Positions 1 to 20,900 of a stretch of DNA of 64,000 nucleotides are shown here, piece after piece. Source of the stretch: Klebsormidium nitens. Taxonomy: Eukaryota > Plantae > Klebsormidiophyceae. The DNA is taken from the NCBI GenBank assembly GCA_000708835.1, contig DF236977.1:248001-312000 (forward strand). Reading direction: 5' to 3'. The notes beneath the pieces were generated by a model. The model did no database searches and was not told the DNA's origin. It worked only from the letters and a program-made list of their open reading frames with translations. Numbering within the stretch: the first letter of the stretch is position 1; each line of letters starts with the position of its first letter. Both the position numbers and the translations under genes were made by a program.

Positions 1-3000
1 TTAACGAGCGCATCCTGGGGCTCGAAATGGCCGGCGCTTTTCAGGCCGGTCCATCCAGGCGTCTGGTCGCCGGCGGTCGCTCTCAGCACTTCCACCGCGA
101 GGGCGTCCAGCGTGAGGAATCCCTGGTCGAATCCCAGGTCTCCAAGGTCCAACCGCGGCCCCAGATCCGTCTCGATCCTCCCCACCAGCTCCGCTACCGC
201 CAGCGAGTCCATTCCGGCTTCCGCCAGCGGGCTGCTCCCGTCGAATGGAACGCCGGACTCTTCCAAAGGGGTCATTCGGTACAGCTGGCGGGAGATATTC
301 TGGAGGCGTTCCGCGGCTCCGGGCGACGGAAGATTTGCACCCACTGCGCTTGCCGCGGTCTTGACCGAGGATCCCTCCCGGGTGGTGGTGGTGAGCTCAA
401 TGCCTTGCGGACCTTCTGCAGCGTTCCCTTGGACTGGTTCCGGCGCGGTCGTACATTTTGCCTGTACAAAACGCACATCTGTTGGTCAAAAGCGTTGTGA
501 TCCTGAAAGCTCATACACGTTATCCTCTCGAACCAAAACTTGGATCCATCAGCGGCTTTATGGGTTTCAGCGTTTGCTGGCTCAGAAGTTAAGTAGCCGC
601 AACAGGTCCTGACTTTTGGCCAGTGAGAAGAACAAGAGAGAAAGTTGGTGGATAGGAATGAAAACTGTCGATCGCGGACGGACTTACAGATGAAAATTCT
701 GTTCCAAGATCAGTTGTTCGCAGCTTGAGCTGAATGAAACTCGAAGTCTTCCAGTAAAGGCTGGTATCCTATAACATGTCAATCCCAGCCGTTCCTCGAG
801 CACACGGATCTTGAAACAGCGAGGGTGTGACAACAGTTTTTTCAAGTCGCGTGCCACGAATCGACCGTCCCAGGGAACTGCTTTTCCCCCACATGATTTT
901 GAATCTGCATTTATTTCTAGCAGCACTTGAGGTTTGTTCCTCTGTTTCCAAAGCTTCGCTTTCGCAGAAGACTAAAGCCCGGATCTCACCTTGGCCAGCG
1001 TGTCTAGCTCGCCCGACGCCCATCGCTGCAGCATGTCGTTTCGGCGGACCTTTCCGCTGGTGGTCTTGGAGAGGGTCTTGGGCGGAAGGATGTATACCCC
1101 GGCCACGGCCACTCCGGCCGTTCCGGCCACGGCGGCGCGGATCCGCCCGGGCAGCTCCGCGGGGCACCGCGCGGGGTCACGCGCCTCCGCAATCAGCAGC
1201 ACGCCCTCGGGCTGGCCCGGCTCACTGGGCGCCTGGGACAGAACGGACAAGGATTGAAGAAGTATCGACTCAATGAAAGGACTGGTCTTAGAGAAGATAG
1301 AAGGGGCCGTTCTGCCTGAGTGCGCCATACGCCAGAAGCTTTCCTGGTAGCTTTACCAGGAAAGGTTAAAAGGAGGATTGAATTCAAGTCATCAGCAAAT
1401 TCAAGTCATCAGCAGATCCTTCTGTGGCAGAAGCTAATGATCTTGTGATTTGCTTGTCAAATCAAAGCTCTGTGACTTCCTGCAAACTCCGAAGTCTTAT
1501 GTGGATGTCAAACCATCCTCGCAAATTTGAAGCGACCATCAAGACATGAAGATGCAAAACTTGACGACATCAAAGCTGTTGAAGAATACCTTTCATTCAG
1601 TAGATCGAGCTTTCAGGTAGAAAGAAGGAAGTCGGAGTTGTTTATTAGGCGCCAACGTGCAAAAACAGGTGTGCAGACTGTGCGACAAAAAGTTTTGCAG
1701 CGCAATCTCATTGTTGTAGACCTCGACCAAGTTCTGCCATTCGGCATCTCACCTGGACCGCAACGATGCCCCCCGGGCGGAGGAAAGTTTCTTCGGCGTC
1801 TTGGACGGCGCGCTCAATGTCTTGTGGGTACACGTTATGTCCTCGCACCACGAGCATGTCCTTGAGGCGTCCCGTCACGAACAATTGGCCTTCCACGATC
1901 TTGCCCAGGTCACCTATGCAAAGAAGAAAGCAAGTTAATGTGGCCCTTTAGGATCCCTCAAACGAGCGCTGTAGACACAAGTCACGAGTCTCCGCCGAAT
2001 AATTCTGAATATGAAGTCAGATCTTGAGTCCTCAAAGCTCCGACCCTGTTGTGAGGGGGCTTGGGGTTCATCAAGGCACTGCAGAGTGAGAATCTTTCAG
2101 TTTTATAGGGGCCTCCAACAGTCTCCCACCGAGAGATATTTTTCTATCTCCAAGCTCTCTCAAAGTATTAAAATCATCTGTAAAGTTTTCTTCTCTGATT
2201 ATTTCAAGTTCTCACCAAAAGCGTAGATATCAGCAGCATGGTGATAGAATGTGTAAAGATCTCCTTCGAAACTCAATCAAGAGCCGGCCCTTCTACGGGG
2301 AGGACAGGGACTGGTCTTTGTCGCGCGTCGAAGTGGAGAATCGTTTATGCGTCGGTTGCACGATACTTCAGCGTTCAAAAAAGACTCACCCGTTCTGAGG
2401 AAATTTCCTTCGAATGGATCTTCCTCCAGGCGCCCCCCGAACACCCTCTGCGTCTCTTCCGGCCGGTTCCAGTACCCCAGGCAGACACTCGGACTTCGCA
2501 GCCAAATCTCGCCTTCAGCGCCTTCCGCCGCCTCGAGGCACGTGGCAGGTTCCACAATTCTGACTTCAATGTCGTGTTCCGGCGGCTGCACGCGCCCGCA
2601 GCTCACCCGCCCGCTCTCGATGCGGCACGTGGCCCCCCACTGGGACGAAATGTACACCACGTGCTCTGCCATCCCGTAAGCGCACATGATCGCTGATGCT
2701 TTCAGGCCCGCGGGCGCGAACGTCGCCGCGAACCTCTGCAGAGTCTGGGGCCAGATGGGTTCCGCTCCGCAATCTACCAGCCGAAGCGCGGAGAGGTCCA
2801 GCCTCGGGCCGCTGCTGTTGTGTTTGCGGGCCGCGAGGTCGAGCGCGAACGCCGGGGCGTGCGTGGCGGTCCCCCGAAACTTGGAGCAGGCTTGCATCCA
2901 GAGAGGGGGGTTCTGGATGAAGGCCAGCGGGGAGATGAGGAACACCGCCGCGCCTGAGACGGCGGGGCAGAGGGCGGACGCGATGAGGCCCATGTCGTGC

Positions 3001-6000
3001 CAGAGGGGCAGCCACGAGACGCAGCGCGTGGCGTCGGACCAGACCGTGGTCATGACGCCCAGGTTGTGCATCAGGTTGGCGTGCCCCACCATGACCCCCT
3101 TCGGGTCGCCCGTGCTGCCCGAGGTGTACATCAGGAAGCACACGCCCCGCGCGGCGTCGCCGGACGGCTTGCCATAACCGGGGGCCTCCTTGCTTCCCAA
3201 CCCTTCCACCACACTGGACCCGTTTGCTTGGGGCTTCCCCTCGGGTTCTGGGAACGGGGAGAAGCTCGAAGTGGCTGAGGACTGTCCCCGCGGAACGGGG
3301 ATTGTGCCACTTGAAAGCTCCCGCGCTTGAATTGTCGCATCGAGCGACCGGCCGTCTCCTTTCCAAGCCGGGACAGGCGCCCACTTGTCCGTTGCCACCC
3401 ACTCTAGTTGCACCCCCGACTCCTCCCGCTTCTTCCACAGCCGCCCTACCGCTTGCGCCCGCTTTGCGAGGAGCACCTTGGCCGTCGTTAGCAGCAGCCC
3501 CGCACCACAGTCCCGGGCAATCAGCTCCAGCTTGGTCTGCCCTTCCTCGACCCGCTTCCGGCTCCCCCCGAGATCTACCGGCGCCAACGGCACCGGAATG
3601 AACCCCCCGCGGATGCACCCGAAGAAGGCCTGGAGGAATTTCAAGGGCTGGTCGGGGGGGAACATCAGCAGGACCCGGTCGCCTCTGGTGGCGCCCTTAG
3701 TAGCGAGACGCCCCGCAACCTGGTCCGCAGCGCGATCCAGCTGGCCAAAGGTCAAGGCGGCTGCCACGTGGCACTTCGGGTCTACGTGGAGGTAGGCGAC
3801 CTTGTCGGCGCGCACCCCCGCCTGGTGGCGCAGGTGGTGGTCCACGCTCGGCAGCAGCGGCGGCCGCCGCGCCTTCACTTGCGCGCGGAGCTCCAGCTCC
3901 GCTTCCTCGACCGGCGGAAACAGCGGCACCGGCTTCTGAAGGTCCATAGCGCTCAGCCCGGGAGAGCGTTCCCGCTTCGCCAGACTTGGGCTCCTCTTGA
4001 CGTTGGGCAGGGTTCCGGTTGCTGACGAAGAGACATCCACGGGGAGCGCAAAGTGGCTGGCCACGAGCTCCTCTGCTGCCGCGGCGGTGCACTCCGTGGA
4101 CTCAAACGAGATGGCGCCCCCAATGTAGAAGACGGAACCCTTGCCCTGGATGTCGTTGTCGAAGCGGCGGACCCAGTCGCCGGCAGCAATCTCTGGAGAA
4201 AAGCGGATCCAATGATCAGATGCGAAGGAAGGGGAGAGCTCTGTCAGGATCCTTGATATCGCAAGCGACAGAAAATCTCTACAAGGTCTGCAGAAAATGT
4301 GATGAAGTAAAAGGCGCAACAAGGAAGACAATAAGACAAAAATCATCAAGGAGAGTCTCGTGAGACCTGTTCTTGGTCTCCGTGATAGCCACACAAGGCA
4401 GCGTCACCTACTGGAAAAGGAGCAAAAACAGCGGAGATAAACGATGGCTTTACCGTGACGACATCAACATAGATGAACCGTAGTAAAAGCACGAAGTTCA
4501 GAATAAGACCAAGCGGTCGCACCTTCGGCCGGCAGCTGGTAGCAGTACCTCCACACTCGCTGCACGTGCACCTCGCCGATGGAGCCCTGCATTGCCGCCA
4601 CGTCAGCACGTAGCAGTCTAATGACGTCATCCGCAGGTGCGTCAGCAGCTCCGTAGGACCAGAAAAGAAAGACGTCGCTCTGCGCGTGGTAGCGCTGGAA
4701 AGCGACGCAGTGGCCGATGGTGGCCGGGTCGGTGCAGTGATGCTCGATGAAGTAGGAGCCCTGGAAAAAGCGGTGCTCCCAGCCAGTCACGGTGGCGAGG
4801 GTGGTGTAGAACAGCCGGAACTGGGGCACCGCCAGCAAGGCTGCCTCGGCCGGATCCCAGGAAATGCAGCCTGAGATCAGATCAAACTGACATCAGCAAG
4901 ACATAACTAAGATGGAAATGATATACAACCATCTAGGGAATGCGCTCGAACAGGCAACTACCGAATTTGAGGGATGGGAACCTTGGAGAGTTACACGGCG
5001 GAAAAAAGACGAAGCTATTGAAGCTTCATGGATCTCCGGATCAAGCTATACGGACATGTATGTCGCCTTTGGCCATGTTTCAGAATCAAAAACTTTCAAG
5101 AATCTTAGAAGAAAGTTTAATATTTATGGGAGGCCTACGCATTCTCTTGCCAGAATCCTAACCAGAAGATTGATCAGATCCGATCAGTTGCTGAACGCTT
5201 TCGAAGTTTCGAAGGAATCAATTAACTACGCTTTAAAAGGTTTTTGTGGGTTATCAGAGCTGCTCAAATCCAACTACCGGAATGAAACTTTAAGAAACGA
5301 CTATGACATAGAGGAACGACACAAACCTTCCGGCGGTGCGGCACCCATCCACGCGCTCCCAGTCACGATCGCCTTGTCAAACGTCCTCTGCTCGCCTCCC
5401 TCGAACACGACCTTGACGCCCTCGCCCTCGCTCCGCACCACCTCTCGAACTCCCTTGTGGCAGGTAACGCTCCCCACGCTGGCGGCCATGCGCTCGAGCA
5501 GGTCCTGGTAGCCCGCCTTGAGGCGTTGCAGCGGCCCAATGGAGAACTGGACGAAGCGGTAGAAGTACGGCGCGGGGGCCTCCACCGGGTAACCGTATCC
5601 GGAGGCCGTGAACCCGAGAAGCGCCTGCTCGAGCTCCCCGGGGGAGACGCCCTTGGAGGCCAGCAGCTGCGTGATGCTCTGGGAGGCGGCCGGAGCGCCC
5701 TTGAGTGGGGCGAGCCAGGAAGAGGAGTCGGCCGCTCCTTCTGTAGCCTGGAGGGGATCGAGGGAAGCATTCATTGAGGTCGTGCCAAATCTCGTAACGT
5801 TAGCTAGCATAGGTCTTCTGAAAGTTCTGGGCTCCGAAGTAAGAGGTTCCATGATCTTTTCATACCGGTAGCTGATCTTGAACTGGAGAGCACGAATTTT
5901 AAAGCAGCTTTGCTTCCTATCCTCGTCCGTTTCATTTTCGTCAAGACTTTTCACGTTTCGTTTTCGTTCATCCTTCAGCAGACAATTCTCCAAGCACCAA

Positions 6001-9000
6001 GCGAGATTTCCATTACTAACGGACCGCCTCAAAATTCCTGGAAGTCAAAAGCGAAGTAATACTTAAACCCACCTCTTTCAAACCTTGGACCACTTTTCGT
6101 GCTTTCGTGGCTTGCCGCAGTAAGTCCTTGAAAGGCCGTACCGTACCGCCACCCTCGAGAGCAACGGCACCGCGGATTCCGTCCCCGAGCGGCTGCCACT
6201 CGGCTCCAATCTCCGCAGCCAGCCGGAAGACAGTCGGGCTAACGCCCCGGGCCAGGAACTGGCCACCCAGGTCGAACCAGAGTCCTCCCACTTCCATGCC
6301 CTGGCACTTGCCCCCCACTATCGCGTCTTTCTCGAAGACCGCCACGTTGGTGTAGCCCAGTGCTTTGAGCCGCAGCGCTGCCGTCAGGCCGCCGATCCCG
6401 GCCCCAATGACGGCGATTGAGGTGTTTGCAGCCCACCGGCGACGCAGCGCTGTATCTTTCCCATTTCTTCGCTCACTTGGATTGGCGGCGAGGGGTTTCT
6501 GCAGACTACCTTTGGTAGCAGGGTTCCCGCGACCGTCTGCCGAAGGTGGAGCAGCCCTTATGGTAGCGGGCGACGCTCGCGACTGTAGGCGCTGCTGAGC
6601 GGGGCCGTGCTTGGCCATCAGCTCCTGGAGGGCGGCGGGCAGCGGCTTCCCGGTCTGCACGCAGTGGAAGTGCTCGTACACGACCGAGCGCATGTGCGCC
6701 AGGGACGCGGACTGCTTCCCGCTCGTTGCCAGGGGCATGCCCAAGCCCGGCGGCGCCAGCCAGGGGTTGAACCCCATCTCCGAGCCGAAGCGCGCGCGCG
6801 CTCTGGGGTCGGGGTCCGTGAGGGCGGCATAGAGGCGCAGAAGCGCAAACGAAAGCCAGGGGCTAGAGGTCTCGTCCCAGACGCGCGTCGCGTCCAGGAG
6901 GCGGTCTCTCTCGGCAGACGAGGGAGGAGTAGGAGCCAGTTGGATCTACGCAGCAAACATGGGAAGAATTAAGAAGCAGTTCGCTGTCAGGCTGAACGAG
7001 CAGAACTTTCGGGAGAGGAGTTTCTTGTGATGAATTTCAAGAAGATCTTTGGATTAGAGAACGCTAAAAAGATCCTTACAGAGCCGGGGCTGAGGGCCAA
7101 GCAGAGCAAAGGTTACGAAAGATGAACCAGATATCCTAGAATAATGCACTGTATCTTCTGATCAGGGGAAGAACGTCTAGCAAGCTTTTCGCTTGAAAGC
7201 CTGCCAAACAGTCTTCCTGGAGCGGGCACTCTGAGAACGTCATAGACACAGAAGTTTTTGACACACAGGTCCAGTATCCGGAAGAGATCAATCTAGATCT
7301 GGGGTTTCATGTAATCCGCAAAAGGATGCAAACGGACAGAAGTTTGTTCGAGTGTATACAGTTCTGATTTCTGTTAAGTTTGCATCAAAGCAAAATAGCC
7401 CCTTCAAAGCTTTCCTTGTTGACGAGATGCGAGGCAATTCTCGAAGTAGAAATCATTTAGCAGTTGGGATGCGGCACTTGAGCCGACTTTCTGCGGCTAA
7501 CCTGCAGGAGGTACGTGTGGCCCCCGCCCAGCACTCTCTCCTGCAGTTCCTCGCCAAGGTAGTCTGGCGGGCGAGTGTCACCAGCCGCCCTGGGAAACGT
7601 CTCGGGAAAGCCCACACAGCTCCTTGGCTCTGCCGCATACTCGTCCAAAGCCCCCTTCTCCAGCACGGCCTCCGTCACCAGGCGATACCGTGCGTAGAAG
7701 GCACCAGCGGGCAAGACATCACGCGCGCTCGATGCTGCTTCCAACGGCGAGCCGCCGTTGCTCTGCGCTCCTCCTCCTCGAGACGCCTTCAAGGCGTCTT
7801 TGTGAAGTGCTGAGGAGGAAGAGAGCGCGGAGGAGGCGGGTTGAAAGTCGAAGGCCACGCCCGTGGAGTAGCAGAGGTCTGTGTAGGAGCGGGGGGCGGA
7901 GTTGATCGAGCCCCAGACTGCTCGACGAAGGTGCGGTTCGGCCACGAGAAGAGCTTCCGCTTTGGGTGGAGACGACGTCACAATGTGCACAAAGGCCTGG
8001 GCAGCAACAAAACACTTCAGTTTGCAAGCAGTTAGAGAAGGGCAGTTGAACGATCCATTATCAGCCTCTTTACACGTGCTAGCAACTGCATCCTCCCAGA
8101 TTCATCTCTCTCAGTTGATGCTTTCATGACGAAAGCTTAATCCCAGGTCCTGAGACCGCCACGTATCAATCAGCCTTGCTCTTCTTCCTTGAAATTTGTC
8201 TTCCAGATACAATATCCAAAGATCTTAGATCTTGCTTCAAGAAATGTCGAGGAAAGCAACGGTGATTTCTCTCCTATCTCTGCGAGATACGAAGCAATAC
8301 ACACAAAAGCTCTCAGTCTCCTGAGCGCTTACAATCGACAATACTTATAAGCTTATCGAAAATTTTACATGTTACAGACCAAAGATGATACGGAATACAG
8401 AACGTTGTGCCATTTCAGGAGGCAACAAAATAATCAATTGCTTAGTCTCAAGATACCTTTAACCTTATCCGTTTCGCGAAGCTTCTCTCCTGAGTCAAAA
8501 TCAGCATGGGATTTCGGTTTCACATGAGCCGTAAGAGCTGAGGACGCAAGCTTTGATTCCGATTCAGTCACCTCCGCAGAGCCACCGAAGGGAAACCCAG
8601 CTGACCCAGTCGAAAGTACCAGGTCCCAGATTGGTGCCATGTCGTGGAGAGCTTCTTGGAGTTCCTGGCACGTGGCGAAAACCTTTCGCGCCGGCCTTCC
8701 TTCGTTAGGAGGGTTTGAAGGCCCCTCAGCAGCTTCTCCCGCTTGTGGACTTCCAACATCCTTCTGGTCATCCGAGTTACCCTTGTGAATCCAGGGACAG
8801 GATCCTTTAGCTGGCTTGAAGAGACGCAGAACCGCTCGACGGGTGTCCGACGCTGCTTCGTCTTCGCTCTTGGAACCGCTGTGGTAAAGAAGAGCGGGAA
8901 GTCTGGCCCCAGAGGGAAGGGACAGGTGAGTAGGGATTGCAGGGTCTGGTGAAACCGTCAATTCTCCCAACACAAAGTGCTTCGATACAGAAGAGCTCTT

Positions 9001-9108
9001 ACTAGAGCGAATGAAGGATAGCATGGAGCAGGAATGGGCCATCAGCTTCGCAAAACCAGGCTCGATGCCAGCGAGCCGGGGATCTTGCTCCATTGTTGCT
9101 GCCGCCAC
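1..9108 (-). CDS. Multidomain fatty-acid-processing enzyme: catalase-like (allene oxide synthase-type) domain + FAD-dependent oxidoreductase + fatty acyl-AMP ligase + acyl carrier protein; 3' end lies beyond the window start (>1816 aa)
   Basis: Exons (minus strand, all GT-AG, phases consistent): 9108-8464, 7996-7502, 6945-6073, 5747-5327, 4870-4523, 4192-2390, 1913-1753, 1232-990, 461-<1. Catalase-like motifs: LPALLYHSG..DTRRAVLRLF, WDLVLSTG, YARYRLV, DTRPPDYLGEEL..YLLQIQL, WDETSSPW, FNPW..SLAHMRSVVY. FAD motif IAVIGAGIGG..EKDAIVGGKC (6388-6405). Adenylation motifs YTSGSTGDPKG (~3096-3128), LPLWHDMGLI, YGMAE, RTGD, GRLKD, KTTSGK. ACP motif GMDSL, with the Ser codon at 204-206. Confidence 0.9.
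90..290 (-). other. Acyl carrier protein (phosphopantetheine-attachment) domain within the last visible exon of the multidomain enzyme
   Basis: Translation of the minus-strand frame starting at 461 gives ...PFDGSSPLAEAGMDSLAVAELVGRIETDLG...FLTLDALAVEV. The frame has no stop before the window edge, so it is absent from the ORF track. Confidence 0.88.
1381..1414. repeat. 17-bp tandem duplication inside an intron of the multidomain enzyme gene
   Basis: aattcaagtcatcagca at 1381-1397 and 1398-1414. Confidence 0.85.
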
Positions 9109-11392
9109 AGCCGTTTGCGGCCTGCATGAAGGAAGCTCGCGGTGAAGTTGCTGGACAGGGATTGCAGCAGACGAGTAGAGACGAAGTTGATCAAAAGTGA
9201 GGCGCTCCGGATTGAGGAAGCAAGATGGACTAAGTTGGGAGGTGCCTTCAGACGCCGATTCACAGCATCACCGTCAGGCTTGCTGGTCTTTCGAAGTAGA
9301 AAGTGGTTTGAGAGCCTTTTCGAGCTTTCAAGCTTTTGAGGAGCTCGTACTGGCCATGTCAGCCAGAGCACCCTATGAGATTAAATCCGAGAGGTCCTTA
9401 GGGTCATGCCTTTGACAATATGAGACTCGAGGGTTATGTCACCTGGCCTTCACGAAAATCCTTGAAAGATCCCAAATGATCTGAAGCCCCAGATTCAAGC
9501 GATGAAGGATCGATGGATCAACGGGCCACTTAGACTTTGCTTAATTGCTGCTTTCCTGAATTAGGTTGTCCGAGGGAATGCATAGGTATCCCGTAAAGCT
9601 CTGCAGGACTCAGCTGACACGTTCATACTCTGAGATAGGAGCCAGCGCTGTGGCAACAAGTGGCTATGGAATGATGGAATATTAGATCCTCCCATGTCGG
9701 TAAGTGCGAAGGTTCAAAAGGCAATAGTAAAAGTCTCTGTGTCTTCAAAATGCTTAATGTGCTTACTGGTAGCTAAAGGTGCTGAATTCATCTCCCTTGA
9801 AACCGTAGGACAGGTTGTTCAAAACTCCAATTCGTCTCCTCGAATGAAACTGTAGTATCTCATCTGGGAGCAAACCTCAATCCGTACTTGCATTTTCGTT
9901 GAAAGATGGCAATCCGACTCCAGCATCTTTCAATAACGTTGTGATTCTGAAACAATACACGCAGGTGCTCAGTAACAGCTTCGCGATCTCACATGACCTT
10001 GGATCTACGGGACGCTGTGGAGATAAGCCTCCTGCAGGATAGATAAGCATCCCTGCTTTCGCTCTATCGATGTAGATATACAAAATGCTATAGAGATGAG
10101 ACTTCCTTCATAAGGAAAGAATGCCTTATTGCATTGGAAATTGGTTTCCCGGCTGATGGATATTCAATTCAATTACCGCATTCCATTCGACTTGACGGAT
10201 GTTCATATCCCAGCAACTTTGTCCCTTTCCTGGTTCCCTGCATGGCGGCCCGCCTGAGTGGTCAAATATTGTAATGCAGGTCCATGATCACCTGCACTTA
10301 GAGTCCTCCTCTCGCAACGAGCATGGGCCTCTATAGTAGCAAGCTGCAAGACCGAAAAGTCGCCCGGCTGATGAAAGACATCTAGAGCAAAGTCACTGGA
10401 AGCGCTGGGGTTCTGATCGAGTTCGGCCGTCCACAGAAAAACTGTTATGACGTCCCCGATAGCGTACGTACCTTTCAAGTACAATCGCAACGTCGAGCCA
10501 GACGCTGCATGAAGTTCCAACATTGTACGAAGGATTCAAGTGTCCAAGTGTATTATGATGCTCAATAACGGATACCTCGTCCTTGCTCCTGTGACTCACT
10601 TGAGCTTCGAGCTCCCAGGGGGTTTTTGCGGTCGCAACTTTTGAACCCTCGTCAAGCCCAATCTTGATTCCTTTCAGCCCCTGCAACAACTTATGTACGG
10701 AACAGCTTGGTGGTTCTCTCCAAGCTCCAGCTGACTACTTACTCGACTCATTGTTGTCGACTAGTCGATGAACTAAGTCGAGGTGCCAATAGAGTTTGAG
10801 TAGCAGAAAGGGGGACCATCATAAGAGTCATTGAGTCAGTACCGCATGATTCCCTTCCTATATTCAATTGTGTGATCCAGCAGCCACTAAGGGACGAACA
10901 TAGGTACGTATTTGCCAGTGTTATCATACGCAAGGAACTCCTGGCCGAGTCGCTAGGCCAGTGCCCGAGCGCCTTGCTTCTCTCGCAAAATACTCAAGTT
11001 GCCCGTGCATAGTCCATCCGGGGTCCATCCTTAAGGACCGAAGCCAACACCTTGGACGGTTCCGACATATCCGGTCTTATGCTCAAAGTAATTAATGATC
11101 GCCTTTGCACAACAATGGGCAGCAGTGGCATCTGAAAACCAAGCGGACGAATTTCCATTCATGCAAAGTCTTTGTCGAGAAAGCATCCAATCTCGCTAGA
11201 AGGACATACCGCGCGCGCACCTGCACCTACGACTCTGACAACGTGCAGGCTCCTAGCACGAATTATCAGACCGTCTAGAATCTCTACTTCCTTGTGGCAG
11301 CAACTCTCCAAACTAGTAGTCAAAGGCGCTAGGTATTCATGGCGGAAATCTAATGGCGCGTGTGACGACCATGATAAAGCCGCTGATTGTTG

Positions 11393-14300
11393 TTACTCGC
11401 AAGCCAGCTTATTGTCCAGACTGGTCAAAGAGATTGCAAAAGCCTGCAAGAGAAAGGAAGACACTGTCCACAAAGAAGCGGGGCACTTGGATGGGGAATC
11501 TCGTTCCATACAGTTTTTATATCGACATCTTTCCCCTATGATTCTGACAGGAAGTGGACCCATGCATGTGCGAAAGCGATCCATTGACACTCTCAAAGCG
11601 CCTCTTATCTGGATCTTCATGGAACCGGAGGGTCCTTCTCGGCAGCAGTCGAGAGCGCGAGCAGGAAGACTACCAACAGACTTCGTGTGGGCTTACCTGC
11701 AATGCTGACATCGGGTACTGATAATCCATTGTGAAAAAGTCGTTGCCCGCCTGCAAGATCAACGGGACGTGGGCTGTTGGTGGTTTTGGTATAACCCGTC
11801 ATGGCTCGTGTCGACGAGCCGACCTTGATTTTCATTTGCTTGCAGTGCTTAGCCTTGGACGCTGACTATTGCCAGATTTCCCTGGCAAAAGAGCGGCATC
11901 TACGCAGCCTAGATCGTCGAAACCGTAACACCGCTGAATAGTCTGAAACTCGCGGTATGTTTCCTAACAGGCCCCACTTCGGACAAAAAGCAGAGAGGTA
12001 ACAATTTGCCGTTTTTATTTCTTACTTCATTTTGAAACACACTGGAACTTGGGCGTGCGTCCAGCTTACCTTCCCAAACTGCAGGATGATGGTCTCCTTG
12101 TCCGAATCAGTGACGAGCTGGAAATTCTTGACGGACGCATGGGTGACTCGCCCGTTGAAGTTGAGACAATATGCGCCCAACTGGCAAAGGACATTAAGGA
12201 TCGGAGTTATGATGCGGCTCTGCTGCTCGATATAGGGTCCGCCTCGTGAAGTATGTTGATGATTCATCGTTCTTAAGGACCAGAAGACACCGGAGGGGGT
12301 AGCTTGAAAGGAGTGGGCGACTCTGATTCAAAAAATAGTCGCTGAAGAACGAACACGACAAGAAGAAAGTTGTGCAAGAACGCAAGAAGCACTGATCTGG
12401 CAACAAAGCTAAGGAAGACTGCGGTGGGCGCGCAATCCAGTGCGGAGGCGCGACCTGCGGTGCGCACATCTCGCTTGTACGACTAGGCCTGCTCACCTGC
12501 TCGTTCCACTTGGGCGGCTTGTTCCGCATGATGACCATCTTCTCCGACTCTTCCTTTTTGCGGAACTTCTCCAGAATTGCCTGCAAAACATCATGCTATG
12601 AGCGATACCGCCTTTATGCGCACTCGTTTGAGACTTGCCGTATCATCTTGGGGGAGCTTGAAAGTGGACCGAAGCGGTCGACAAAGTACGTTAAGCTGTT
12701 CGCTTTTCACGCTGCCTTCGAATTACATTCGAGCAGGGGCAGATGGAGAGGGTCCGGTCAACGTTTACCTGGTCTTTTCGCTTTCCGTTGGCGTCGAAGG
12801 TACACCTGTGTTCGTTGGCGTCCAGCTTCGGGATGACCCCCGTCATCTTGCGCGGCCCGCGTGTCCCCATCACGTTGTACTGATACGTCACGCACCCCAA
12901 CATCTCGCGCTCCGCTTGGCTGCTCGGAACGCTGCAACAGTCACAATTTGGAAGGAGCTTAACGGCATGCTTTAGTGTGGCAAAGCGCCCTAAAAGACCG
13001 TGAGTCAGACGGTCTCCGCGGGTGCCACAACGATTTCTCTCCGCTCTGCTCCGAAGTTTTCAAGCCCACCTGATGCTCGAGGGGTTCTGAGAGTAGCAGT
13101 CCGCGCCTTTGTCGTAGAACCAAAACTCCGTCCCCATGAAGTTGGCCCGAAGCTGCAGATAGGGAGGGCGGCATGAGAACCCCGCGGCAGGACAGCAGCC
13201 CTAGGCGAAAGAGCAGCCCACGTCGTCCATTCAACGGTCCGAAATAAGCACCTTGCCAAAATTCTTCGTGGGCAAGTTGAAAGCGCCAGGAGCTGACCGG
13301 ACGAGCCCGCTAAGAGGAGAACGCCTGCTTCGCGGTAGCACCTGTCCCAACGTCGGGGCATTGCTCCGTTCTCACCTTTCCGAAGTAGTTTGCGCTGCTT
13401 TGGTTGAAGTCATCCCGGTCAAGAGAGATGACGTAGTTGCTGCAAGGAAGGAACTCGATCTCTTTCAGAAACCTTTTCGCCAACAGCGTCCGTCTCAGCT
13501 AGAGTCTGGGCTTTTGATTGCCAACAGATGCTCCTATACAAAAAGCGTTTTCAGAGAATCAGAAAACACACAACGATGCGGACTCGTTCTTCGCAGACTT
13601 TTGCAATGACCGGCCTGACGCGCTCACCTTGTTTTTGCTTTCGGCTCATTCTTTGCGCAAAGGAGAAACCGATCGCCCTCCGTGAGACACAACACAAAGA
13701 CTGGATGTCCACTTTTCTTCCCTTTCTCCCTCCGAATATGGCACTGTACGGGTTTGTCACGTGGCCCAGGCTGCAGTCCATGATAGTAGGGATGAATATT
13801 TTTGGATTTGATTATTGCTTCCGACGTCTCCATACACGCTAGAGTCGAGTGCTGACCGTTTATTAAAAGCTGTGGAGAATATCTAGTGGGCTTCTTTCGC
13901 GTAAAACCGGATTCCCCCTGTCCTGTGCATTTGATCTGCTCATCGTCATCTGAAAACTCAAGTAGCACATCCTGCTTGGCCTGAAAATACCCACGAAGTC
14001 TTTCTGCTCTGTTTCAAAGCGGCTCTCAGACTTGGTAACCACAAATGGAAACGGTCCTCACCTGCATGAGGAAGGCCCGCACGTCGCTCAGGTCCACTGC
14101 TCCCGAGGGAGTTGAGGCGATCCCAACCGTTGGGCTGATCGGCTCGTACACCTGCACCCAAAGCAGGGTAAGAAGTTCCCGTGCTAGTTTGTAAATTGCT
14201 TGAGTTCGGAGATGGAGTCATTGTTTGGCCAAGATCCTCCTGATCCAGGCCTCGAGATGGACAGTAACAACCAGCCTTGTGAAGGTTTTTGACCTAGGAC

Positions 14301-16181
14301 CCTCGTCAAGCGCTTGCCAAAGCCGTTTCAATTCATTGACGATCTTGCTGATGTGCAACAGCTTACCGACTCGATCCCGTAGTCGTTGAGCTCTTTCTCA
14401 ACCTCTTGCGCAGCGGGGCTCAGGGAATCTGAGCGCTGCTTTTTGGGAGACGCGCGGGGGCCGGGGTCTAGCTGCCGCAGGTTGGGCACGTAAGGCTCGT
14501 CGCCTTCCTCGCTGGGAACACTGCAAGGAGCCCGCTGAAGGTGACTCACAACCTTATTCTAGACCCAAAATTCACCCTCCATCATTACGCACGTATCAGT
14601 ATATTACGAAGTAAGAGTTGGCAAGAGTGAAGTCTTTTCAGTGTTTCCTGCAGTTGGGTCCAAGTAAGAAGTCTTTGTTGAACAGAAGGGGACGCATCTC
14701 GAAAGCACTGCTATAGTCGGTTATAAGCAGGAAGTGTTGCTTACTTACTGGTCCATCTGCGGAGTTAGAAAATCTCTGCATCTTTAGGTGCACCATTGAA
14801 CAGAGTACACAAGTATTCCAGCACCCGTCATCATCTGGTGAAGCGGGGCCTGCAAGAGTACTCACCTTGGTGGGGGCGAATCCCGTCTCTCTGCAAAGCT
14901 GCTCAGTGCAGGTTCCCCGATTGGTGATCGAGGGGAGAGCGGCCGAGATCCTGCCGCACTACCTGGCCGCATGGTGCGGGAAAGGCTGTCGTTGGCTACA
15001 GCCAGCCCTGTACGTGGAACAACCTCTGTCATCAAGAGACCTTCCGGTACCGTGGAGGCCCACATTTGAGGATTGACCCTCACAAGAGTAGAAAGCAGGA
15101 GTTTGCACTATAAAGTTCGGACCGCACAGGTAAATTTTGCACGACTCAGTTCCATATGAGAAGGACTTATCTACTCAAGGGAAACCTTCCACCGAGGGTC
15201 TACATTTTGGCACTGGCAAGATAGCTGTAAACTTACCACCACTCAGACTCCTCTCTTTCCGTTTGAGGGCAGCAACGGACTGCTGCAATGATGCAGTCTG
15301 CATTTGAACATTTGACGGCAGTGAGACCCCACAAAACTTGCTGTTGATGCAATCAGTTTTATCTGCAGCTAGGATGACCATCAGTAAGCGTCCAGTGGAT
15401 GGGTTCAATGGGATGCTAGCACTGTAACTCACGGAACTGTTGCAAGTAGCCTTCCTGATCTTCGGGTCAGGTTGCTTCTTGCAGATGTGCACCTGTATTT
15501 GCCCGCTTACCGGAGGCCTCAGGACGTAACCGCTGCTTGGCGTCCTGGCGGGGCTGTCGTCCCCCTCTGAGTCATCAAACAGGTGATTGTTGTACTGGGT
15601 CACTGCACAAATAGCGGTCAGTCAGGGCCAGCTTGCTCCCTTGTAAAGCAACACAAGCTTCCCGGAAGCCTGTGGCAATGACGACACTGTTGAGCTCAGG
15701 GTCATTTGTTCCAGATCTGACCATTTGCTCAAGCACAAGCCAGAAGTATTGAGCTGAAGTTGACATCCAGTTGCCTTATGTCGACAAAGTCTTTGATTAT
15801 CATATAGCTGCCAGATACGAGCCCCGCTCTTGGGGGCCCATATGACGTCACTTTGACACAGCAAAGATCCTTTACCCAGGATTACCAGAATCAAGGGGCG
15901 GGCGTATAAGAGAATGGTCATAAGAGCGCACCGCTGCCTGTCAGGAAGTCAACGCCCTTGTTCGGTGCCATTTGCCCAAAGCCCCCGCCCAGCTTGCTGC
16001 CTCTGGCTGGGCTACCCCTCTCAGCAGCAGCTGCATTCTCATAGGAGCGGGCAGATACGGGCCGGACAGGGGCAGCTTTGCGGGACCCCTTCTGAGAACC
16101 CAGGCCGGCCCCCCAGTGGTCGCCCCGGATGTCCAGCTCATCTGCCTCTGAGCCGCCACTCCTAAACGATGCTTGCTCCAT
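11393..16181 (-). CDS. Tubby-like protein (C-terminal Tub domain, long disordered N-terminus, no F-box), ~614 aa
   Basis: Tub motifs split across exons: [23 protein letters not shown]|[30 protein letters not shown]|[42 protein letters not shown]|[16 protein letters not shown]. Exons: 16181-15932, 15602-15493, 15297-15237, 15025-14866, 14520-14367, 14239-14062, 13949-13628, 13439-13376, 13152-13070, 12931-12769, 12580-12497, 12180-12070, 11750-11697, 11443-11393 (sum 1845 nt, in frame). The five 5'-most exons and the start codon are less certain. Confidence 0.88.
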
Positions 16182-17991
16182 TGTGCTGTCTGTCAAGCAA
16201 ATGGCCCGTTCAGGCGTAGTCCACGCACCTTCGCAAACTGTCTTGGTCCAACGACTCAAATCGATCACTATCTGTGGGGCCCATCAGCTTCCTCTTGCAG
16301 AGGTTGTAGCAGGTCACTTCCTCTGGATCCTAAGCTGCAAGTGAGCTCAACCTGAGCATTCGATGTCTTGACTTCAATTGGTTGAGCCGAGCTGCTATGT
16401 ACTGTAATTGCTACTTGCTACTTGCAACTAGTAAGTACAGCATTTTACTGCTGTAGCTTTGATGAGCTGCAGGCTGTCCCGTATGAAAGGTTTCTTTTGC
16501 TTTCAAAGCCTGCCTGTTCCCCCAACTGTTACGAGCTTTGAATGCTGCGCACGTCAGTCACTCTACAATCTAGCTGTACTTCAGGTTCTTGGCAGGCTGC
16601 CAGTGCTGGCACCGAATGCGGCTGCTGTATCACGAAGTGTCATCAAGCAGATTGCCAGAATTTGCCTACAAAGCTTGGTTTACCTATATGGCCGCCTGGC
16701 CGCCAGAAACCGACCTGCGCGCGCGTTCTTGCAGTAGGTATCGATCACGGCCGCTGGATAAAACTTAAAGTTAAAGGCAATCCTCTGCAGCGTCCGCTTC
16801 CTCTGCAGCGTTTGCTTGCTTGGGTCGGCCGAAGAGGATGTCTTTGGCCGGGCAGGTTGGAACAATCGCCGCCGGCAGAAGGCTTTCGTTCAATTGGTTT
16901 ACCAATCAGCAGCATCACCGGGCACTTTCTGCCGGTGCTCGTAGAGGACCCGAAGCTTGAGGGCGGCACAAAACGGTCATGATGGACCTTCAAAGTCTGA
17001 GAAGCCAAGGTCTGCAAAGAAGCGTCTTGACATCCTCATGCAGACAGAGAGATACCTCATGCAGACAGAGTGAGATACCTCCACTGCAGTCTGCTGGCAC
17101 CAGGGTTCAGCTGTGAAAATTAGACAATGTGAAAAGCAAAGACGTGACTAGGAACTTGAGTCCTAGTCACTGGCCCGTCATGGCATTCTGCTTGGGAAAT
17201 GTCCGGCCAACTAAGAATTCGTCCTTCTGCCACAATCAGGCTGTGCTTGCTCTCTCCAAAATTAAACATTTGATTTGAACGTTGCTGCCTTCCTGCAGCA
17301 TACCATGTACGACAGGTCCATCTTTGCTACTGATTTTTGAATGCTGCTAAGCACTAATAGCTTTGAGCCGTTCTCAATCTAGGCGACAGCACAGTCTGTG
17401 AGAAGCCTGCACGTAATCTGAGCAGCCCAACTCAGGACAAGAGGATTTAATTCTCCACAGGATCGGAAGCAGGGTCTGCCATTTGCTACTTACGCATTTG
17501 GAGCTTGGTGAGCCCTTACCTGTCTGTAAAATGTTTTGCCAGTCACTGACATGTCTTGTCCATGACACCCGTCCTTCCTCATGATAGGCGACAAGAAACC
17601 CTTGGGGCTGTTCCAATCAAGACAGTCAAAACCCAGTTTTCAGCTTTAAGATCCGGAAAGCTTGAAGACTGTTATTGTAGATGGAGATCTGTCCCTCAGT
17701 GTCCATGCTTCTGATAAGGCCCACAAAAAGCACCACTGGGGGCAAAATTCATGCAATTCACCAGCAGGAAATCACTACTCCCACATCTGGAAGCAAGCGC
17801 AAGCATGCATTGCCCCATGAACAATGAGGCTTTCTGAAAAAAATTCTCAGACAGGAAAAGCTGAGGCTCAAGACGGCTTGGAAAAAACCTGTGTCACCAG
17901 AATCTTCCTGCAAAGGCATTCTGCAGTTCATTGATCTTCCTTCCTGTGTCTATTTCGATCTGCCTGTGCAGTCAAAGCTGCGCGACCAGCA

Positions 17992-20900
17992 ATGACATCA
18001 TGCACGGCGGTGGATGGTGCTGTTGATCCAGAAAGTGGATACCCTCGCAAGTTTGAGCGCATCTGCAAAGGGGCGCTGCGGAGCCGCTACATTCGGTATC
18101 CTTGCGGGCCCCCGACAGCCTTTGTTTCTGACATTGTCACAGTCAATGAGGTAAGCCCAATTGGAGTGAGCGCTCTACCTCTGCCATAATGCGACTAGGT
18201 CACTGATACTATTGTCTTTGATGAGCTTGAGCAGAACTCGAGAAATTCTAATTGTGGAGCTCCCTCCTTAGGTTGGGTTACTTCGCGTTCTATCTTTGTG
18301 GCTCCACTAAAAGCTATGGCCCCTTGCACCTCTCACATGCTCTATGCAATACAGGAGGTTGATGTCATTGCGCTGGAAGCGCAGTTCCCTGTCATTCCAG
18401 AGAGTGACAGAGCAAGCACCAGCACCGAGCGCTTTCGACAAGCCCTGTGGAATCAGCTGGACTCCTTAAGGTGCCAACCTCACCTTTTTGAAGGCTTTTG
18501 TGTTGGAAACGCCATAAGAGATGCACTTCACTTGGAGCAGTTTATGATTGAAGTAATGAAGGCTCACGATGATAGTACATCCCTCTCCTGAAAGTGGCCT
18601 GGGCAACAGCATGTCAGTTGGTGAAACCAGAACAGGACAGGTCAACCCGCCTGTCGTCTTTTCAAACCTCGCAACATCCTGGATGCAAAGATACGATCAT
18701 ATTTGTCAATCCGCTTGCAGGGGCTTTGACGACAGCTTGATCCGTGTAGACAAGTATGGCAACGTGCTGTACCGTTTGGCAGAGCCGGGCTCTCCACTCT
18801 ACGGCCAGATTGACCACTGGTTCCCTGTTGCAAGTGAGCCATTCACACAGATTCCTCTGCGTTACTTCCACGGCAGCTCCTACTTGCGTGACACGTCTGA
18901 CTACTGACGCTGATATGTGCAGCAATATTCTTTTCGAGAAATGGTTGTGCAGCGGCTAAGCTTTTCGAGAGCACAACAGTCGGGTGCTTCGACGAATATC
19001 ACATCCTTGCCCGAGGCACGTTGCGCATCAACTCCACTCCACGATGAGGCTTCAATGTTGCTTTTGCCCTATTGGTATTGGTTTTTCGCCTTCGGTTTGA
19101 GCTGAAGCTGGTACTGCACTCCCACAACAGGCAGCCTGCCTGTGCCGCGCTGCCTGCTCCGTTCTCTTTTACAATCCCCCTTTGAGTATGCTCCGTGTGT
19201 GTTCAGGGGGCGGCCTGTCGGTGCTCCCCAACCTGGCCAGCATCTACTGGGAGGCCAACAAGCACAAGGGCGACCAGCTCGAGTTCCTGGTGCCCTGGTA
19301 TGATCTCCAGTGCGGCGTCCACTTCACGCGCTTCATCAGCACCTTCGCCTCCACCGACCTCGTACTCAGGTCGCCAGCCTGCCTCATAGTCTACCGCAAT
19401 TGCTCATTAATCCTGGCGTCCTTGGTTCTCTTCAGCAACTCTCACAACGTACAAAGCTGGCAGAGGCGGAAGCGTTTCAGACGTTGCTGTTCTTCATTCT
19501 ATAGCTCATTCGACAAATCCGTGAATCTGTGGATTTTATAACAGCTGAACAGCTCTGCTTCCAAATGCAACCCCTGAGTGGAGGTTGGAGAGGAGTTCGC
19601 TGCAACAACACCGTGACAGGATCCTCACTGACTATGTTGGCCCCTCTCTGCAGGCAGCGCATGTTCGCTCTCTTCTTTGGTAGCGACGGCGAGGCGCACC
19701 ACGTGGTCGCGGACTGGGCTGCTCCCAGCTTGAGCCGGACGGCCTACATCGCGTCAGCAGTGGTCAGCATGGACGCGCAAGCAAGCAGCAAGGGCCCGGG
19801 AGCAGTCAGACAGATCAAGAAAGGTGGGGCGCCGACTGGAGTGCTGGATGTCGGAGCCAGCGCCTCGTATCTTGCCGCCTTCTTGGGTCAAGAAAGCTTC
19901 GGCTGCAAGCATTTGTAAACTCAAGGCCGAAGCAACATCAATAGTCTTTGAAAGTTGAACTTACTTTTCAGCGTTCTTTCCGCTTTCGAACTCACTCCCC
20001 GTATTAGCTGGACTGGCGTGCAGCTGGACGGCCTTACTTATACCAGGCAGCTCACAGCGGAACCTGATGCGTTTTGGTCTTAACTTAGGCATGCCTTTCG
20101 CATGATTGAAGCGGCCGGCTCGAAGAAGTCGCACGACCGCCGTCTTATTTGTGTTGATGATGTTGCAAAGCCCGAGCAACCCTGCAAACAAGAGGGCACC
20201 AGCTCCCACATCCAAATTACATACCCACTGCTCGCAGCTGGCTCCTTTTGCCGGAACGACTTGTTCATCCCTCTGTCCGGTTTTCGCGCAGGAGAGCAGC
20301 GGCGGTCGACTAAGCCGTGGACGGCGGAGGAGACGGCCGCGCTGCAGGCGGCGGTGGCCAAGCACAGCGAGCCGGGCCAGCGGTCGCTGCCGCTGCACAA
20401 GTGCCGCGAGATCCTGGCGGGCTACCGCATCTTCCGGGACGCGCAGCGCGAACCAAAGGACCTCTACGACAAGGTGAGCGGCCGCGCTGGAACCGGGAGC
20501 AAAGCTGTCTCTTGGTCGGAAGAGGGGATTTTGCGGGGCCGCGGACTGAAGTTGTGGAGCCGCACTCATCCATCATGAAGCAATTTCTAGAGTTCCTGGG
20601 CGAAGGGTGAGCAATTGCTAGGGTCTCTCCAGTTGCAGTCTTACATACTTTGCAACTTTCATCTAGTTGGCAGCATGTCACTTTGCCACCACCATTTGCA
20701 ATCTCAAGACTTTGGCGGACAGAACTTCTGCTTCGCAGAATGATGGCCTCGTTTCGCATCAGAGCGGGCAGCGTCGTGAAATTGCGCTCAACTCTTTCGC
20801 AGTGGAGGAACCTGCAAAACCAGCAGTCCAAGGGCGGCACCCCCCGCCGGTCCAGCGCCAATGCCTCCTCCCCCTGCCCCGCCGCCACCAGCCCCGCCCC

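What the first reader, a model, noticed from the sequence alone, without database searches (positions are those of the whole stretch)
1..9108. Single-gene fatty-acid-tailoring 'assembly line': catalase-like AOS + FAD oxidoreductase + FAAL + ACP
Seen in sequence: nine phase-consistent exons join four recognisable domains in one reading frame, including splice junctions that fall inside conserved motifs (YLLQ|IQL, RTG|DLG). Established: FAALs activate fatty acids and load them on an ACP independently of CoA; catalase-related AOS enzymes act on fatty-acid hydroperoxides; PAI-type flavoproteins act on polyunsaturated fatty acids. Inference: this is an NRPS/PKS-like lipid-modifying enzyme that makes an oxylipin-like or surface-lipid metabolite. 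I recall similar multidomain proteins predicted in land plants but know of no assigned product or reaction. It is the strongest candidate here for an undescribed biosynthetic system.
Basis: partly seen in the sequence, partly recalled or inferred. Interest (0 to 1): 0.88.

Follow-up and report, generated by a model that had tools for sequence, protein, structure and literature searches.

The report
Permuted algal fatty-acid tailoring megaenzyme gene
This alga has one nine-exon gene that joins a coral-type catalase-like domain, a fatty-acid-isomerase-like flavoprotein, a fatty-acid activating enzyme and a carrier domain; it is a re-ordered relative of a large, widespread plant protein whose job nobody knows.

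Summary
On the minus strand, nine GT-AG exons (9093 down to 1) give an open frame of 1775 codons that runs off the window start. Two domain junctions each lie inside a single exon. The first five introns sit at the same places in two related contigs.

Profiles identify the domains: coral allene-oxide-synthase type (1u5u, 1.3e-62), Propionibacterium acnes fatty-acid isomerase type (2b9w, 5e-73), FAAL type, and an ACP with a DSL serine.

The gene is not unique. Over 360 land-plant proteins of about 2310 aa carry the same domains, and a 2021 paper noted them as function unknown. Myxobacteria and cyanobacteria have related fusions.

Two things are new here:
- **Circular permutation.** The catalase-like domain comes first, directly before the flavoprotein as in bacteria. 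In land plants it comes last.
- **A strongly derived catalase-like domain.** The proximal Arg and Tyr are kept. Two arginines invariant in all 185 other members are replaced, and the distal His region is rearranged. The domain is still under purifying selection (dN/dS about 0.2).

No RNA evidence was obtainable, and the product is unknown. The scan had already noted the gene's 3' continuation (ACP, Pls-like part) in the neighbouring window.

The parts
8572..9093 (-). Exon 1. Start codon at 9093-9091. N-terminal part of the cAOS-like domain (aa 1-174), including a lineage-specific insert at aa 98-152.
   Evidence: DNA and protein similarity to L001 and L002 starts at this ATG.
7502..7996 (-). 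Exon 2. Middle of the cAOS-like domain (aa 175-339), with a second insert at aa 230-272. It ends at YLLQ.
   Evidence: The acceptor and donor are conserved in L001 and L002.
6073..6945 (-). Exon 3 (aa 340-630). One exon holds the C-terminal part of the cAOS-like domain (to about 6628, with R425 and Y429), a 65-aa linker, and the FAD Rossmann start (from about 6432, GAGIGG).
   Evidence: The same uninterrupted exon is present in L001 and L002.
5327..5747 (-). Exon 4. PAI-like FAD domain (aa 631-770).
4523..4870 (-). Exon 5. PAI-like FAD domain (aa 771-886).
2390..4192 (-). Exon 6 (aa 887-1487). One exon holds the C-terminal end of the FAD domain (to about 4047), a linker, and the FAAL N-terminal domain (from about 3851) with the YTSGSTGDPKG and YGMAE motifs.
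1753..1913 (-). Exon 7. FAAL hinge and A8 region (DLGKIVEGQLFVTGRLKD...).
990..1232 (-). Exon 8. FAAL C-terminal subdomain with the A10 lysine (SGKVRR, K1602).
1..461 (-). Exon 9 (open at the window start). Linker and ACP. The phosphopantetheine serine is S1708 in GMDSL (codon 206-204). The gene continues off the window.

Best explanation
**Shown.** One minus-strand gene encodes at least 1775 aa in a single reading frame. The order is cAOS-like catalase-related domain (aa 1-445), PAI-like FAD domain (aa 511-935), FAAL-type adenylating domain (aa 1001-1622), then ACP (Ser1708), and the gene continues off the window.

It is the algal sister of the land-plant family ordered 'flavoprotein-FAAL-ACP-Pls/PosA-like-catalase'. 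Its order is circularly permuted: the catalase-like domain comes first and abuts the flavoprotein, as in the myxobacterial and cyanobacterial relatives (FAAL-cat-FAD-ACP-TE/R).

**Inferred mechanism.**
- The FAAL-type domain adenylates a long-chain, probably polyunsaturated, fatty acid and loads it on the fused ACP without CoA.
- The cat-FAD pair is kept adjacent in bacteria and in this alga, so it probably acts as one tailoring unit on the unsaturated part of the chain. The flavoprotein would perform PAI-like hydride chemistry at a bis-allylic carbon. The catalase-like domain would handle a peroxide or epoxide-type intermediate.
- A downstream module releases the product. It is Pls-like according to the neighbouring window's note and the plant homologues.

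In this alga the catalase-like domain keeps the proximal Arg and Tyr but has lost arginines that are invariant elsewhere. Its chemistry is therefore probably altered, and it may no longer be a heme enzyme of the cAOS kind.
For: **Gene model.** Nine GT-AG exons with no stop. Each of the cat/FAD and FAD/FAAL junctions lies inside one exon.

**Conservation.** The five intron positions and the MEQD(P/A)RL start are conserved in L001 and L002. No Pls-like coding lies upstream of the cat exons in any of the three. dN/dS is about 0.19-0.27 in the cat core and FAD domain and 0.27-0.43 in FAAL, against about 0.5-0.6 in the linkers.

**Domain identity.**
- A profile of the cat domains hits 1u5u at 1.3e-62. 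The mycobacterial catalase-related protein scores 1e-15 and true catalases about 1e-12.
- A profile of the FAD domains hits 2b9w/2bab over its full length at 5e-73. The next hit scores 1.6e-22. 2BAB is the P. acnes isomerase (PMC6162330).
- The top NCBIfam families and all 15 best solved structures for the ligase are FAALs.
- PP-binding with DSL.

**Family.** More than 360 land-plant proteins carry the same domains. Eucalyptus transcript contigs carry the whole ORF, while the genomic copy has introns.

**Trees.** The FAD tree puts the window clade sister to land plants (SH-aLRT 98). The cat data do not reject a single clade with land plants (p-AU 0.79).

**Bacterial context.** One operon reads FAAL | cat-FAD-ACP | SnoaL-like.
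Against: - No RNA evidence exists for this gene. No listed run held it, and the only laid piece was a 33-base partial match.
- No member of the family has a known product (PMC8460268; PMC11837247).
- Cat-like domain: the residues matching cAOS R102 and R360 are Arg in all 131 land-plant and 54 other members, but Y70 and Q436 here. The Arg three residues before the distal His is missing. The His sits four residues out of register. The cAOS Thr-His pair is not present.
- FAD domain: 5 of 24 family-invariant positions differ, including the 'PH' pair, which is YQ here.
- FAAL: the stretch where solved FAALs and bacterial relatives carry the FAAL-specific insertion is about 20 residues shorter.
- No lipoxygenase partner was seen that could supply a hydroperoxide.
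Confidence: 0.6

Rival explanations
1. The fusion is real, but in this algal lineage the catalase-like domain is no longer a heme enzyme. It survives as a structural, lipid-binding or regulatory module, or binds another cofactor. Chain tailoring is then done by the flavoprotein alone.
For: - Two arginines invariant in 185 other members are replaced in all three algal sequences: Y at the cAOS R102 position and Q or K at R360.
- The Arg three residues before the distal His is also replaced.
- From my own knowledge, the equivalents in human catalase (R72, R112, R365) hold the heme propionates.
- A four-residue deletion follows the candidate distal His.
- There are two long low-complexity inserts.
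- The cat-tree branch is very long, at 1.29.
Against: - The proximal Arg425 and Tyr429 are kept in all three species.
- The replacement motifs KH(F/M)VLGE and LYHSG are themselves conserved across about 50% sequence divergence.
- dN/dS of the core is about 0.2, the same as for the FAD and FAAL domains.
Confidence: 0.35
2. The flavoprotein works as an O2-dependent oxidase on the tethered chain, and the catalase-like domain simply consumes or uses the H2O2 it releases, acting as a built-in scavenger or peroxygenase. No allene-oxide-type chemistry is involved.
For: - The FAD domain belongs to the amine-oxidase superfamily, in which most members release H2O2.
- The cat and FAD domains are adjacent in bacteria and in this alga.
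- Most family members have Phe-His, not the Thr-His pair of hydroperoxide-converting relatives.
Against: - The closest solved relative by 50 orders of magnitude is the redox-neutral isomerase PAI, not an oxidase.
- The cat profile matches cAOS far better than true catalases.
- Thirteen of 54 non-plant members do carry Thr-His. The cyanobacterial 'STHTVG' is almost the coral 'ATHTVG'.
- In land plants the two domains lie about 1700 residues apart.
Confidence: 0.15
3. These are two or more separate genes or transcripts, for example cat-FAD and FAAL-ACP, that merely lie in line, much as RefSeq splits the Selaginella locus.
For: - No cDNA evidence was obtained here.
- Selaginella RefSeq models give a 456-465 aa FAD-only protein and separate 1049 and 1832 aa proteins.
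- In one bacterial operon FAAL is a separate gene.
Against: - Exon 6 carries the last 50 residues of the FAD fold and the FAAL domain in one ORF. Exon 3 does the same for cat and FAD.
- The joined FAD domain aligns end to end with contiguous homologues.
- Frames and splice sites are conserved in three species.
- Eucalyptus transcripts carry the full fused ORF.
Confidence: 0.06
4. It is a pseudogene or an assembly artefact.
For: Active-site residues are derived. No expression was seen.
Against: - There is no stop or frameshift in 5.3 kb of coding sequence.
- Purifying selection acts on all domains.
- The same structure appears in two independent assemblies.
Confidence: 0.02

Closest known systems
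Land-plant 'Carrier domain-containing protein' of about 2310 aa. Examples are Eucalyptus XP_039159797 and tomato K4ASN0. Patil et al. [quoted passage not shown]
   Same: It has the same domain types (PAI-like FAD, FAAL, ACP, catalase-like). The FAD tree places it as sister (SH-aLRT 98). At least one intron position appears shared (alga aa 886, Eucalyptus aa about 403-404). The function is unknown in both.
   Different: The order is circularly permuted. The residues matching plant positions about 1850-2060 lie directly upstream of those matching positions 21-100, on the same exon. Identity is only 30-35%. Arginines of the catalase-like domain that are invariant in plants are lost. The Pls/PosA-like part could not be checked because it lies off the window.
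Myxobacterial and cyanobacterial FAAL-cat-FAD-ACP-TE/R proteins. Examples are Archangium WP_407755965 and Coleofasciculus WP_190428476, annotated 'FAD-dependent oxidoreductase'.
   Same: The cat-then-FAD adjacency, the FAAL, and an ACP after the tailoring or activating domains.
   Different: In bacteria FAAL comes first and release is by a thioesterase or reductase. They have no introns. Their catalase-like domains keep all invariant residues, and some have Thr-His.
Coral allene oxide synthase-lipoxygenase (Plexaura homomalla cAOS, PDB 1u5u and 3dy5).
   Same: It is the best solved relative of the family's catalase-like domain (1.3e-62). In both, the catalase-like domain is N-terminal and fused to a fatty-acid-oxidising partner. 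The proximal Arg and Tyr are shared.
   Different: The partner is a PAI-like flavoprotein, not a lipoxygenase. There is no Thr66-His67 pair, S161 stands at the Asn137 position, and R102 and R360 are replaced.
[quoted passage not shown]
   Same: Full-length profile match at 5e-73 and the GxGxxG FAD motif.
   Different: PAI is a free-standing soluble enzyme acting on free linoleic acid. Here the domain is embedded in a carrier-protein megaenzyme, and 5 of 24 family-invariant residues differ.
Bacterial FAAL loading domains (PDB 7r7f, 3lnv, FadD23, FadD28 and FadD32).
   Same: They are the closest solved structures (1e-61 to 1e-34). The core ANL motifs are shared, and an ACP follows.
   Different: The stretch after the YGMAE motif is about 20 residues shorter, at the place where FAALs carry their specific insertion.

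Membership tests
Catalase-related allene oxide synthase (cAOS) type hemoprotein | Sequence or fold similarity to cAOS that exceeds the similarity to true catalases. | tested here: met
   The family profile A1 hits 1u5u at 1.3e-62, against catalases at about 1e-12. Window exon 1 alone hits 1u5u at 0.006. The window domain aligns to family members in three blocks.
Catalase-related allene oxide synthase (cAOS) type hemoprotein | Proximal Tyr heme ligand with its Arg partner (cAOS R349 and Y353). | tested here: met
   R425 and Y429 in ASLAHMRSVVY. They are conserved in the window, L001 and L002.
Catalase-related allene oxide synthase (cAOS) type hemoprotein | Distal Thr-His pair (cAOS T66-H67). 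| tested here: not met
   The window has S-K-H39-F-V-L-G. The residue before the His is Lys, and the His lies four residues nearer the conserved Gly than in 180 of the 185 other members. MAFFT and hmmalign place it differently. His67 is catalytic in cAOS (PMC5617202).
Catalase-related allene oxide synthase (cAOS) type hemoprotein | Conserved arginines around the heme (cAOS R64, R102 and R360). | tested here: not met
   R102 is Y70 and R360 is Q436 (Y, Y, Y and Q, Q, K in the three algal sequences), against Arg in 185 of 185 others. There is no Arg three residues before the His.
Catalase-related allene oxide synthase (cAOS) type hemoprotein | Heme binding and conversion of a fatty-acid hydroperoxide. 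| not testable with these tools
   This needs expressed protein.
PAI-type polyunsaturated fatty acid isomerase flavoprotein | Full-length similarity to PAI that exceeds the similarity to other amine-oxidase-fold enzymes. | tested here: met
   Profile A2 hits 2b9w at 5e-73 over positions 8-420 of 430. The next hit scores 1.6e-22. The joined window domain aligns end to end with family members.
PAI-type polyunsaturated fatty acid isomerase flavoprotein | FAD dinucleotide-binding motif and the family-invariant residues. | tested here: inconclusive
   GAGIGG and 19 of 24 invariant columns are kept. Y291F, G365Q, P381Y, H382Q and T405V differ.
Fatty acyl-AMP ligase (FAAL) | ANL core motifs, with the closest relatives being FAALs rather than CoA ligases. 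| tested here: met
   YTSGSTGDPKG, YGMAE, RTGDLG and SGKVRR are present. The top NCBIfam hits are FAAL families. The 15 best PDB hits are FAALs.
Fatty acyl-AMP ligase (FAAL) | FAAL-specific insertion of about 20 residues in the N-terminal domain. | tested here: not met
   After YGMAE the window is about 20 residues shorter than 7r7f and the bacterial relatives, and about 9 shorter than land plants. Patil et al. rate the helix and the blocked CoA pocket as more decisive.
Fatty acyl-AMP ligase (FAAL) | FAAL-specific helix and blocked CoA pocket. | not tested
   The segment PLAFIQNPPLW aligns with PVAFLQRPFRW of 7r7f. No structure-based check was made.
Acyl carrier protein domain | PP-binding profile and the DSL serine. 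| tested here: met
   PF00550 at 1.4e-6. GMDS1708L.
Plant flavoprotein-FAAL-ACP-Pls-catalase family | Common descent with the land-plant proteins. | tested here: met
   The FAD tree gives window clade plus land plants at SH-aLRT 98. The cat data allow one clade (p-AU 0.79).
Plant flavoprotein-FAAL-ACP-Pls-catalase family | Domain order with the flavoprotein first and the catalase last. | tested here: not met
   The catalase-like domain is N-terminal and shares an exon with the flavoprotein start in three species.
Plant flavoprotein-FAAL-ACP-Pls-catalase family | Pls/PosA-type terminal domain (TIGR02353). | not testable with these tools
It lies beyond the window start.

The most novel reading that the evidence does not exclude
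The cat-FAD pair is a lipoxygenase-free route to oxidised or rearranged polyunsaturated acyl chains, working on a carrier-tethered substrate.

In this reading the PAI-like flavoprotein activates the bis-allylic carbon. The catalase-like domain turns the resulting peroxide-type intermediate into an epoxide or allene-oxide-type product. The Pls-like membrane module then couples or polymerises it.

The family, conserved from algae to crops, would then make an undescribed lipid signal or surface polymer. The algal permutation would show which two domains must sit together.
Probability: 0.15. Interest if true: 0.9.

Novelty: new variant of a known kind. Interest (0 to 1): 0.6.

Why it matters
A protein of about 2300 aa with these five domain types is present in hundreds of land plants, including major crops. 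It has been noted in print but has no known reaction, product or phenotype.

The algal version adds three usable facts:
- The family predates land plants.
- Its domain order was circularly permuted during evolution. The catalase-flavoprotein adjacency is shared with bacteria, which marks that pair as the likely functional unit to express and assay.
- In the algal branch the catalase-like domain has exchanged residues that are invariant everywhere else, yet stays under selection. That offers a natural comparison for what those residues do.

It is also a compact target for finding a CoA-independent fatty-acid pathway in the plant lineage.

Tried and rejected
- **RNA evidence.** The look-up of sequencing runs listed no holder. 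Laying four runs gave only one 33-base partial match at 5528-5560. Splicing therefore rests on comparison, not on cDNA.
- **Single-sequence PDB searches.** Exon 2 and the cat part of exon 3 found nothing. Only profiles of homologues gave the cAOS match.
- **ESM Atlas look-up.** Exon 3 gave only generic Rossmann flavoproteins.
- **Rfam.** Nothing was found over the whole window.
- **Upstream exons or a tandem upstream copy.** Rejected. There are no homologue hits beyond 9135 in the window or upstream in L001 and L002, and no long ORFs in 9.1-18 kb.
- **Independent bacterial acquisition separate from land plants.** The FAD tree rejects it. The cat tree alone is unresolved, but the AU test allows one clade.
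- **Structure prediction of the spliced protein.** Not done. The joined sequence has no reference, long sequences may not be typed in, and single exons do not cover a fold.
- **PAI structure paper (PMC1413795).** It is not held, so PAI catalytic residues were not checked.
Full report
**Observation.** The window's first 9.1 kb carries GC-rich coding blocks on the minus strand, separated by blocks of lower GC. Pfam finds the following on the long open stretches:
- Amino_oxidase/NAD_binding_8 on 6016-6777 and 5301-6032.
- AMP-binding (5.8e-58) on 2277-4394.
- PP-binding on 3-485.

The first block (8437-9108) matches only coral allene oxide synthase 1u5u (E=0.006).

**Gene model.** I aligned the window with an orthologous metagenome contig (L001, ENA ERZ26165376, about 70% aa identity). 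I also aligned it with a second, more distant contig (L002, Logan SRR23617307, 50-58% identity). Similarity is confined to discrete blocks.

At the five junctions those contigs cover, a canonical GT donor and AG acceptor stand at the same codon position and phase in the window and in L001. The intron sequence is not conserved. The exon boundaries fall at the same protein positions in L002.

The remaining three junctions are canonical GT-AG sites and fit the homologue alignments.

The resulting model is 9093-8572, 7996-7502, 6945-6073, 5747-5327, 4870-4523, 4192-2390, 1913-1753, 1232-990 and 461-1. It has 1775 codons and no stop, and it is still open at base 1.

DNA and protein similarity to both contigs starts exactly at the ATG at 9093 (MEQDPRL...). 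There is nothing homologous upstream in any of the three. The catalase-like domain is therefore the true N-terminus.

**Is it one protein?** Two domain junctions need no splicing at all:
- Exon 3 holds the last 106 residues of the catalase-like domain, a 65-residue linker and the FAD Rossmann start in one ORF.
- Exon 6 holds the last 50 residues of the FAD fold, a linker and the FAAL N-domain.

Both features recur in L001 and L002.

The FAD domain, joined from four exons, aligns end to end (query positions 12-440) with uninterrupted FAD domains of homologues.

dN/dS against L001 is 0.22 for the catalase core, 0.24 for FAD and 0.27 for FAAL, against 0.57-0.62 in the two linkers.

No RNA evidence could be had. 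No listed run holds the stretch, and the only laid piece is a 33-base partial match.

**What the domains are.** A representative search with exon 3 found 1069 relatives. Many are 1100-2500 aa long and match both halves of the query.

- *Catalase-like domain.* A profile of 18 catalase-like domains (A1) hits coral cAOS 1u5u at 1.3e-62. It hits the mycobacterial catalase-related protein 3e4w at 1e-15 and true catalases at about 1e-12.
- *FAD domain.* A profile of 17 FAD domains (A2) hits 2b9w/2bab over its whole length at 5e-73. The next hit is 1.6e-22. 2BAB is the P. acnes polyunsaturated fatty acid isomerase (PMC6162330).
- *Ligase.* The best NCBIfam families and all 15 best solved structures are FAALs, and the core motifs are present.
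- *ACP.* It has GMDS1708L.

**The family.** Land plants hold more than 360 proteins of about 2310 aa. Examples come from Eucalyptus, tomato, soybean, cotton, apple, Magnolia, a fern and Selaginella. Their order is FAD-FAAL-ACP(x1-2)-Pls/PosA-type domain (TIGR02353)-catalase.

In Eucalyptus, two 7.2-kb contigs from independent runs carry the entire 6942-nt ORF, while the genomic copy has introns. The fused mRNA is therefore real there.

Patil et al. [quoted passage not shown] A 2025 FAAL review adds nothing on them. Further literature searches found no characterisation.

Myxobacteria and cyanobacteria have FAAL-cat-FAD-ACP-TE or -R. In one operon FAAL is a separate gene, followed by cat-FAD-ACP and a SnoaL-like protein.

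**Relationship.** The FAD-domain tree places the window, L001 and L002 together (SH-aLRT 100) as sister to the land-plant clade (SH-aLRT 98). The pair is nested among bacterial cat-FAD proteins.

The catalase-domain tree leaves the window clade on a long branch in a polytomy. The tree with window clade and land plants held together is slightly better than the free search, with p-AU 0.79.

An intron after alga aa 886 maps to Eucalyptus aa about 403, where Eucalyptus also has an intron.

Other agents' notes call the genome an alga. My tree is consistent with a plant-lineage alga, but I did not identify the species.

**Permutation.** In all three algal sequences, the residues homologous to plant positions about 1850-2060 (catalase) lie directly upstream of those homologous to plant positions 21-100 (FAD), on one exon. 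The two orders are circular permutations of one another.

Bacteria also have cat immediately before FAD. The algal adjacency is therefore most simply ancestral and the land-plant order derived. This is inference.

**Derived active sites.** I compared 131 land-plant and 54 other complete catalase-like domains.

| cAOS position | Land plants and others | Window / L001 / L002 |
|---|---|---|
| R102 | Arg in 185 of 185 | Y / Y / Y |
| R360 | Arg in 185 of 185 | Q / Q / K |
| Arg three before distal His | Arg in 180 of 185 | absent |
| Distal His | His in 180 of 185 | rearranged (see below) |
| Proximal R349, Y353 | kept throughout | kept (R425, Y429) |

- Around the distal His, the algal sequences have a conserved KH(F/M)VLGE. 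Their His is four residues closer to the conserved Gly, and the alignment is ambiguous there.
- From my own knowledge, the equivalent arginines of human catalase bind the heme propionates. Canonical heme binding is therefore doubtful in this lineage.
- Land plants have Phe-His. Thirteen of the 54 others have the Thr-His of hydroperoxide-converting enzymes.
- In the FAD domain, 19 of 24 invariant columns are kept. An invariant Pro-His is Tyr-Gln in the window and L001, and His-Gln in L002.
- In the FAAL, the stretch after YGMAE is about 20 residues shorter than in the solved FAAL 7r7f and in bacterial relatives. That is where the FAAL-specific insertion lies. Patil et al. consider other elements more decisive for CoA rejection.

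**Mechanism (inferred).** Activation and CoA-independent loading of a long-chain fatty acid on the fused ACP follow from the FAAL-ACP pairing. The persistent cat-FAD adjacency and the identities of their closest solved relatives point to tailoring of a polyunsaturated chain. None of this is shown.

**Verdict.** The architecture is a permuted, strongly derived algal member of a known but uncharacterised family.

Noticed in passing
window about 2560-2680 (-): Directly after the YGMAE motif, the FAAL domain is about 20 residues shorter than the solved FAAL 7r7f and the bacterial relatives, and about 9 shorter than land plants. This is where the FAAL-specific insertion sits.
   Followed up: partly
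L006:986-5935: A bacterial operon reads FAAL (582 aa), then 4 bp later cat-FAD-ACP (868 aa), then a SnoaL/NTF2-like protein (196 aa). The last could be a cyclase or epoxide hydrolase acting on the product.
   Followed up: no
L003:8576-16030 and L004, same coordinates: The cyanobacterial FAAL-cat-FAD-ACP-TE gene is preceded by two short ketoacyl-synthase-like ORFs and a 109-aa ORF. Its catalase-like domain has 'RRSTHTVG', almost identical to coral cAOS 'RRATHTVG'.
   Followed up: no
Selaginella proteins P0005, P0164, P0162, P0163, P0165 and P0166: Older models fuse FAD-FAAL-ACP-Pls-cat (2385-2439 aa). RefSeq splits the same loci into FAD-only proteins (456-465 aa) and proteins of 1049 or 1832 aa. 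The gene structure there is unsettled.
   Followed up: no
L007 (Eucalyptus grandis CM028317.1) and the cluster of P0004: Eucalyptus has several paralogues on one chromosome (LOC104421554, LOC104423492, EUGRSUZ_J00810, J00812 and J00816). One intron position (aa about 403-404) seems shared with the alga's intron after aa 886.
   Followed up: partly
L001:about 1600-1700 and about 4100-4520: The orthologous contig, labelled 3x coverage, has one in-frame stop in exon 2 and a one-base frame problem at the exon 4/5 junction. These are probably assembly errors rather than a broken gene.
   Followed up: partly
window 5528-5560: A 33-base stretch of exon 4 matches, with 3 mismatches, the middle of an abundant 1107-base contig present in all four laid runs of 'organism A'. 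Its origin is unknown. It may be another flavoprotein transcript or chance.
   Followed up: no
window 9100-18000: There are no long ORFs, no homologue hits and no Rfam match. It appears to be a 9-kb gap between this gene and the next noted gene at about 17992.
   Followed up: partly
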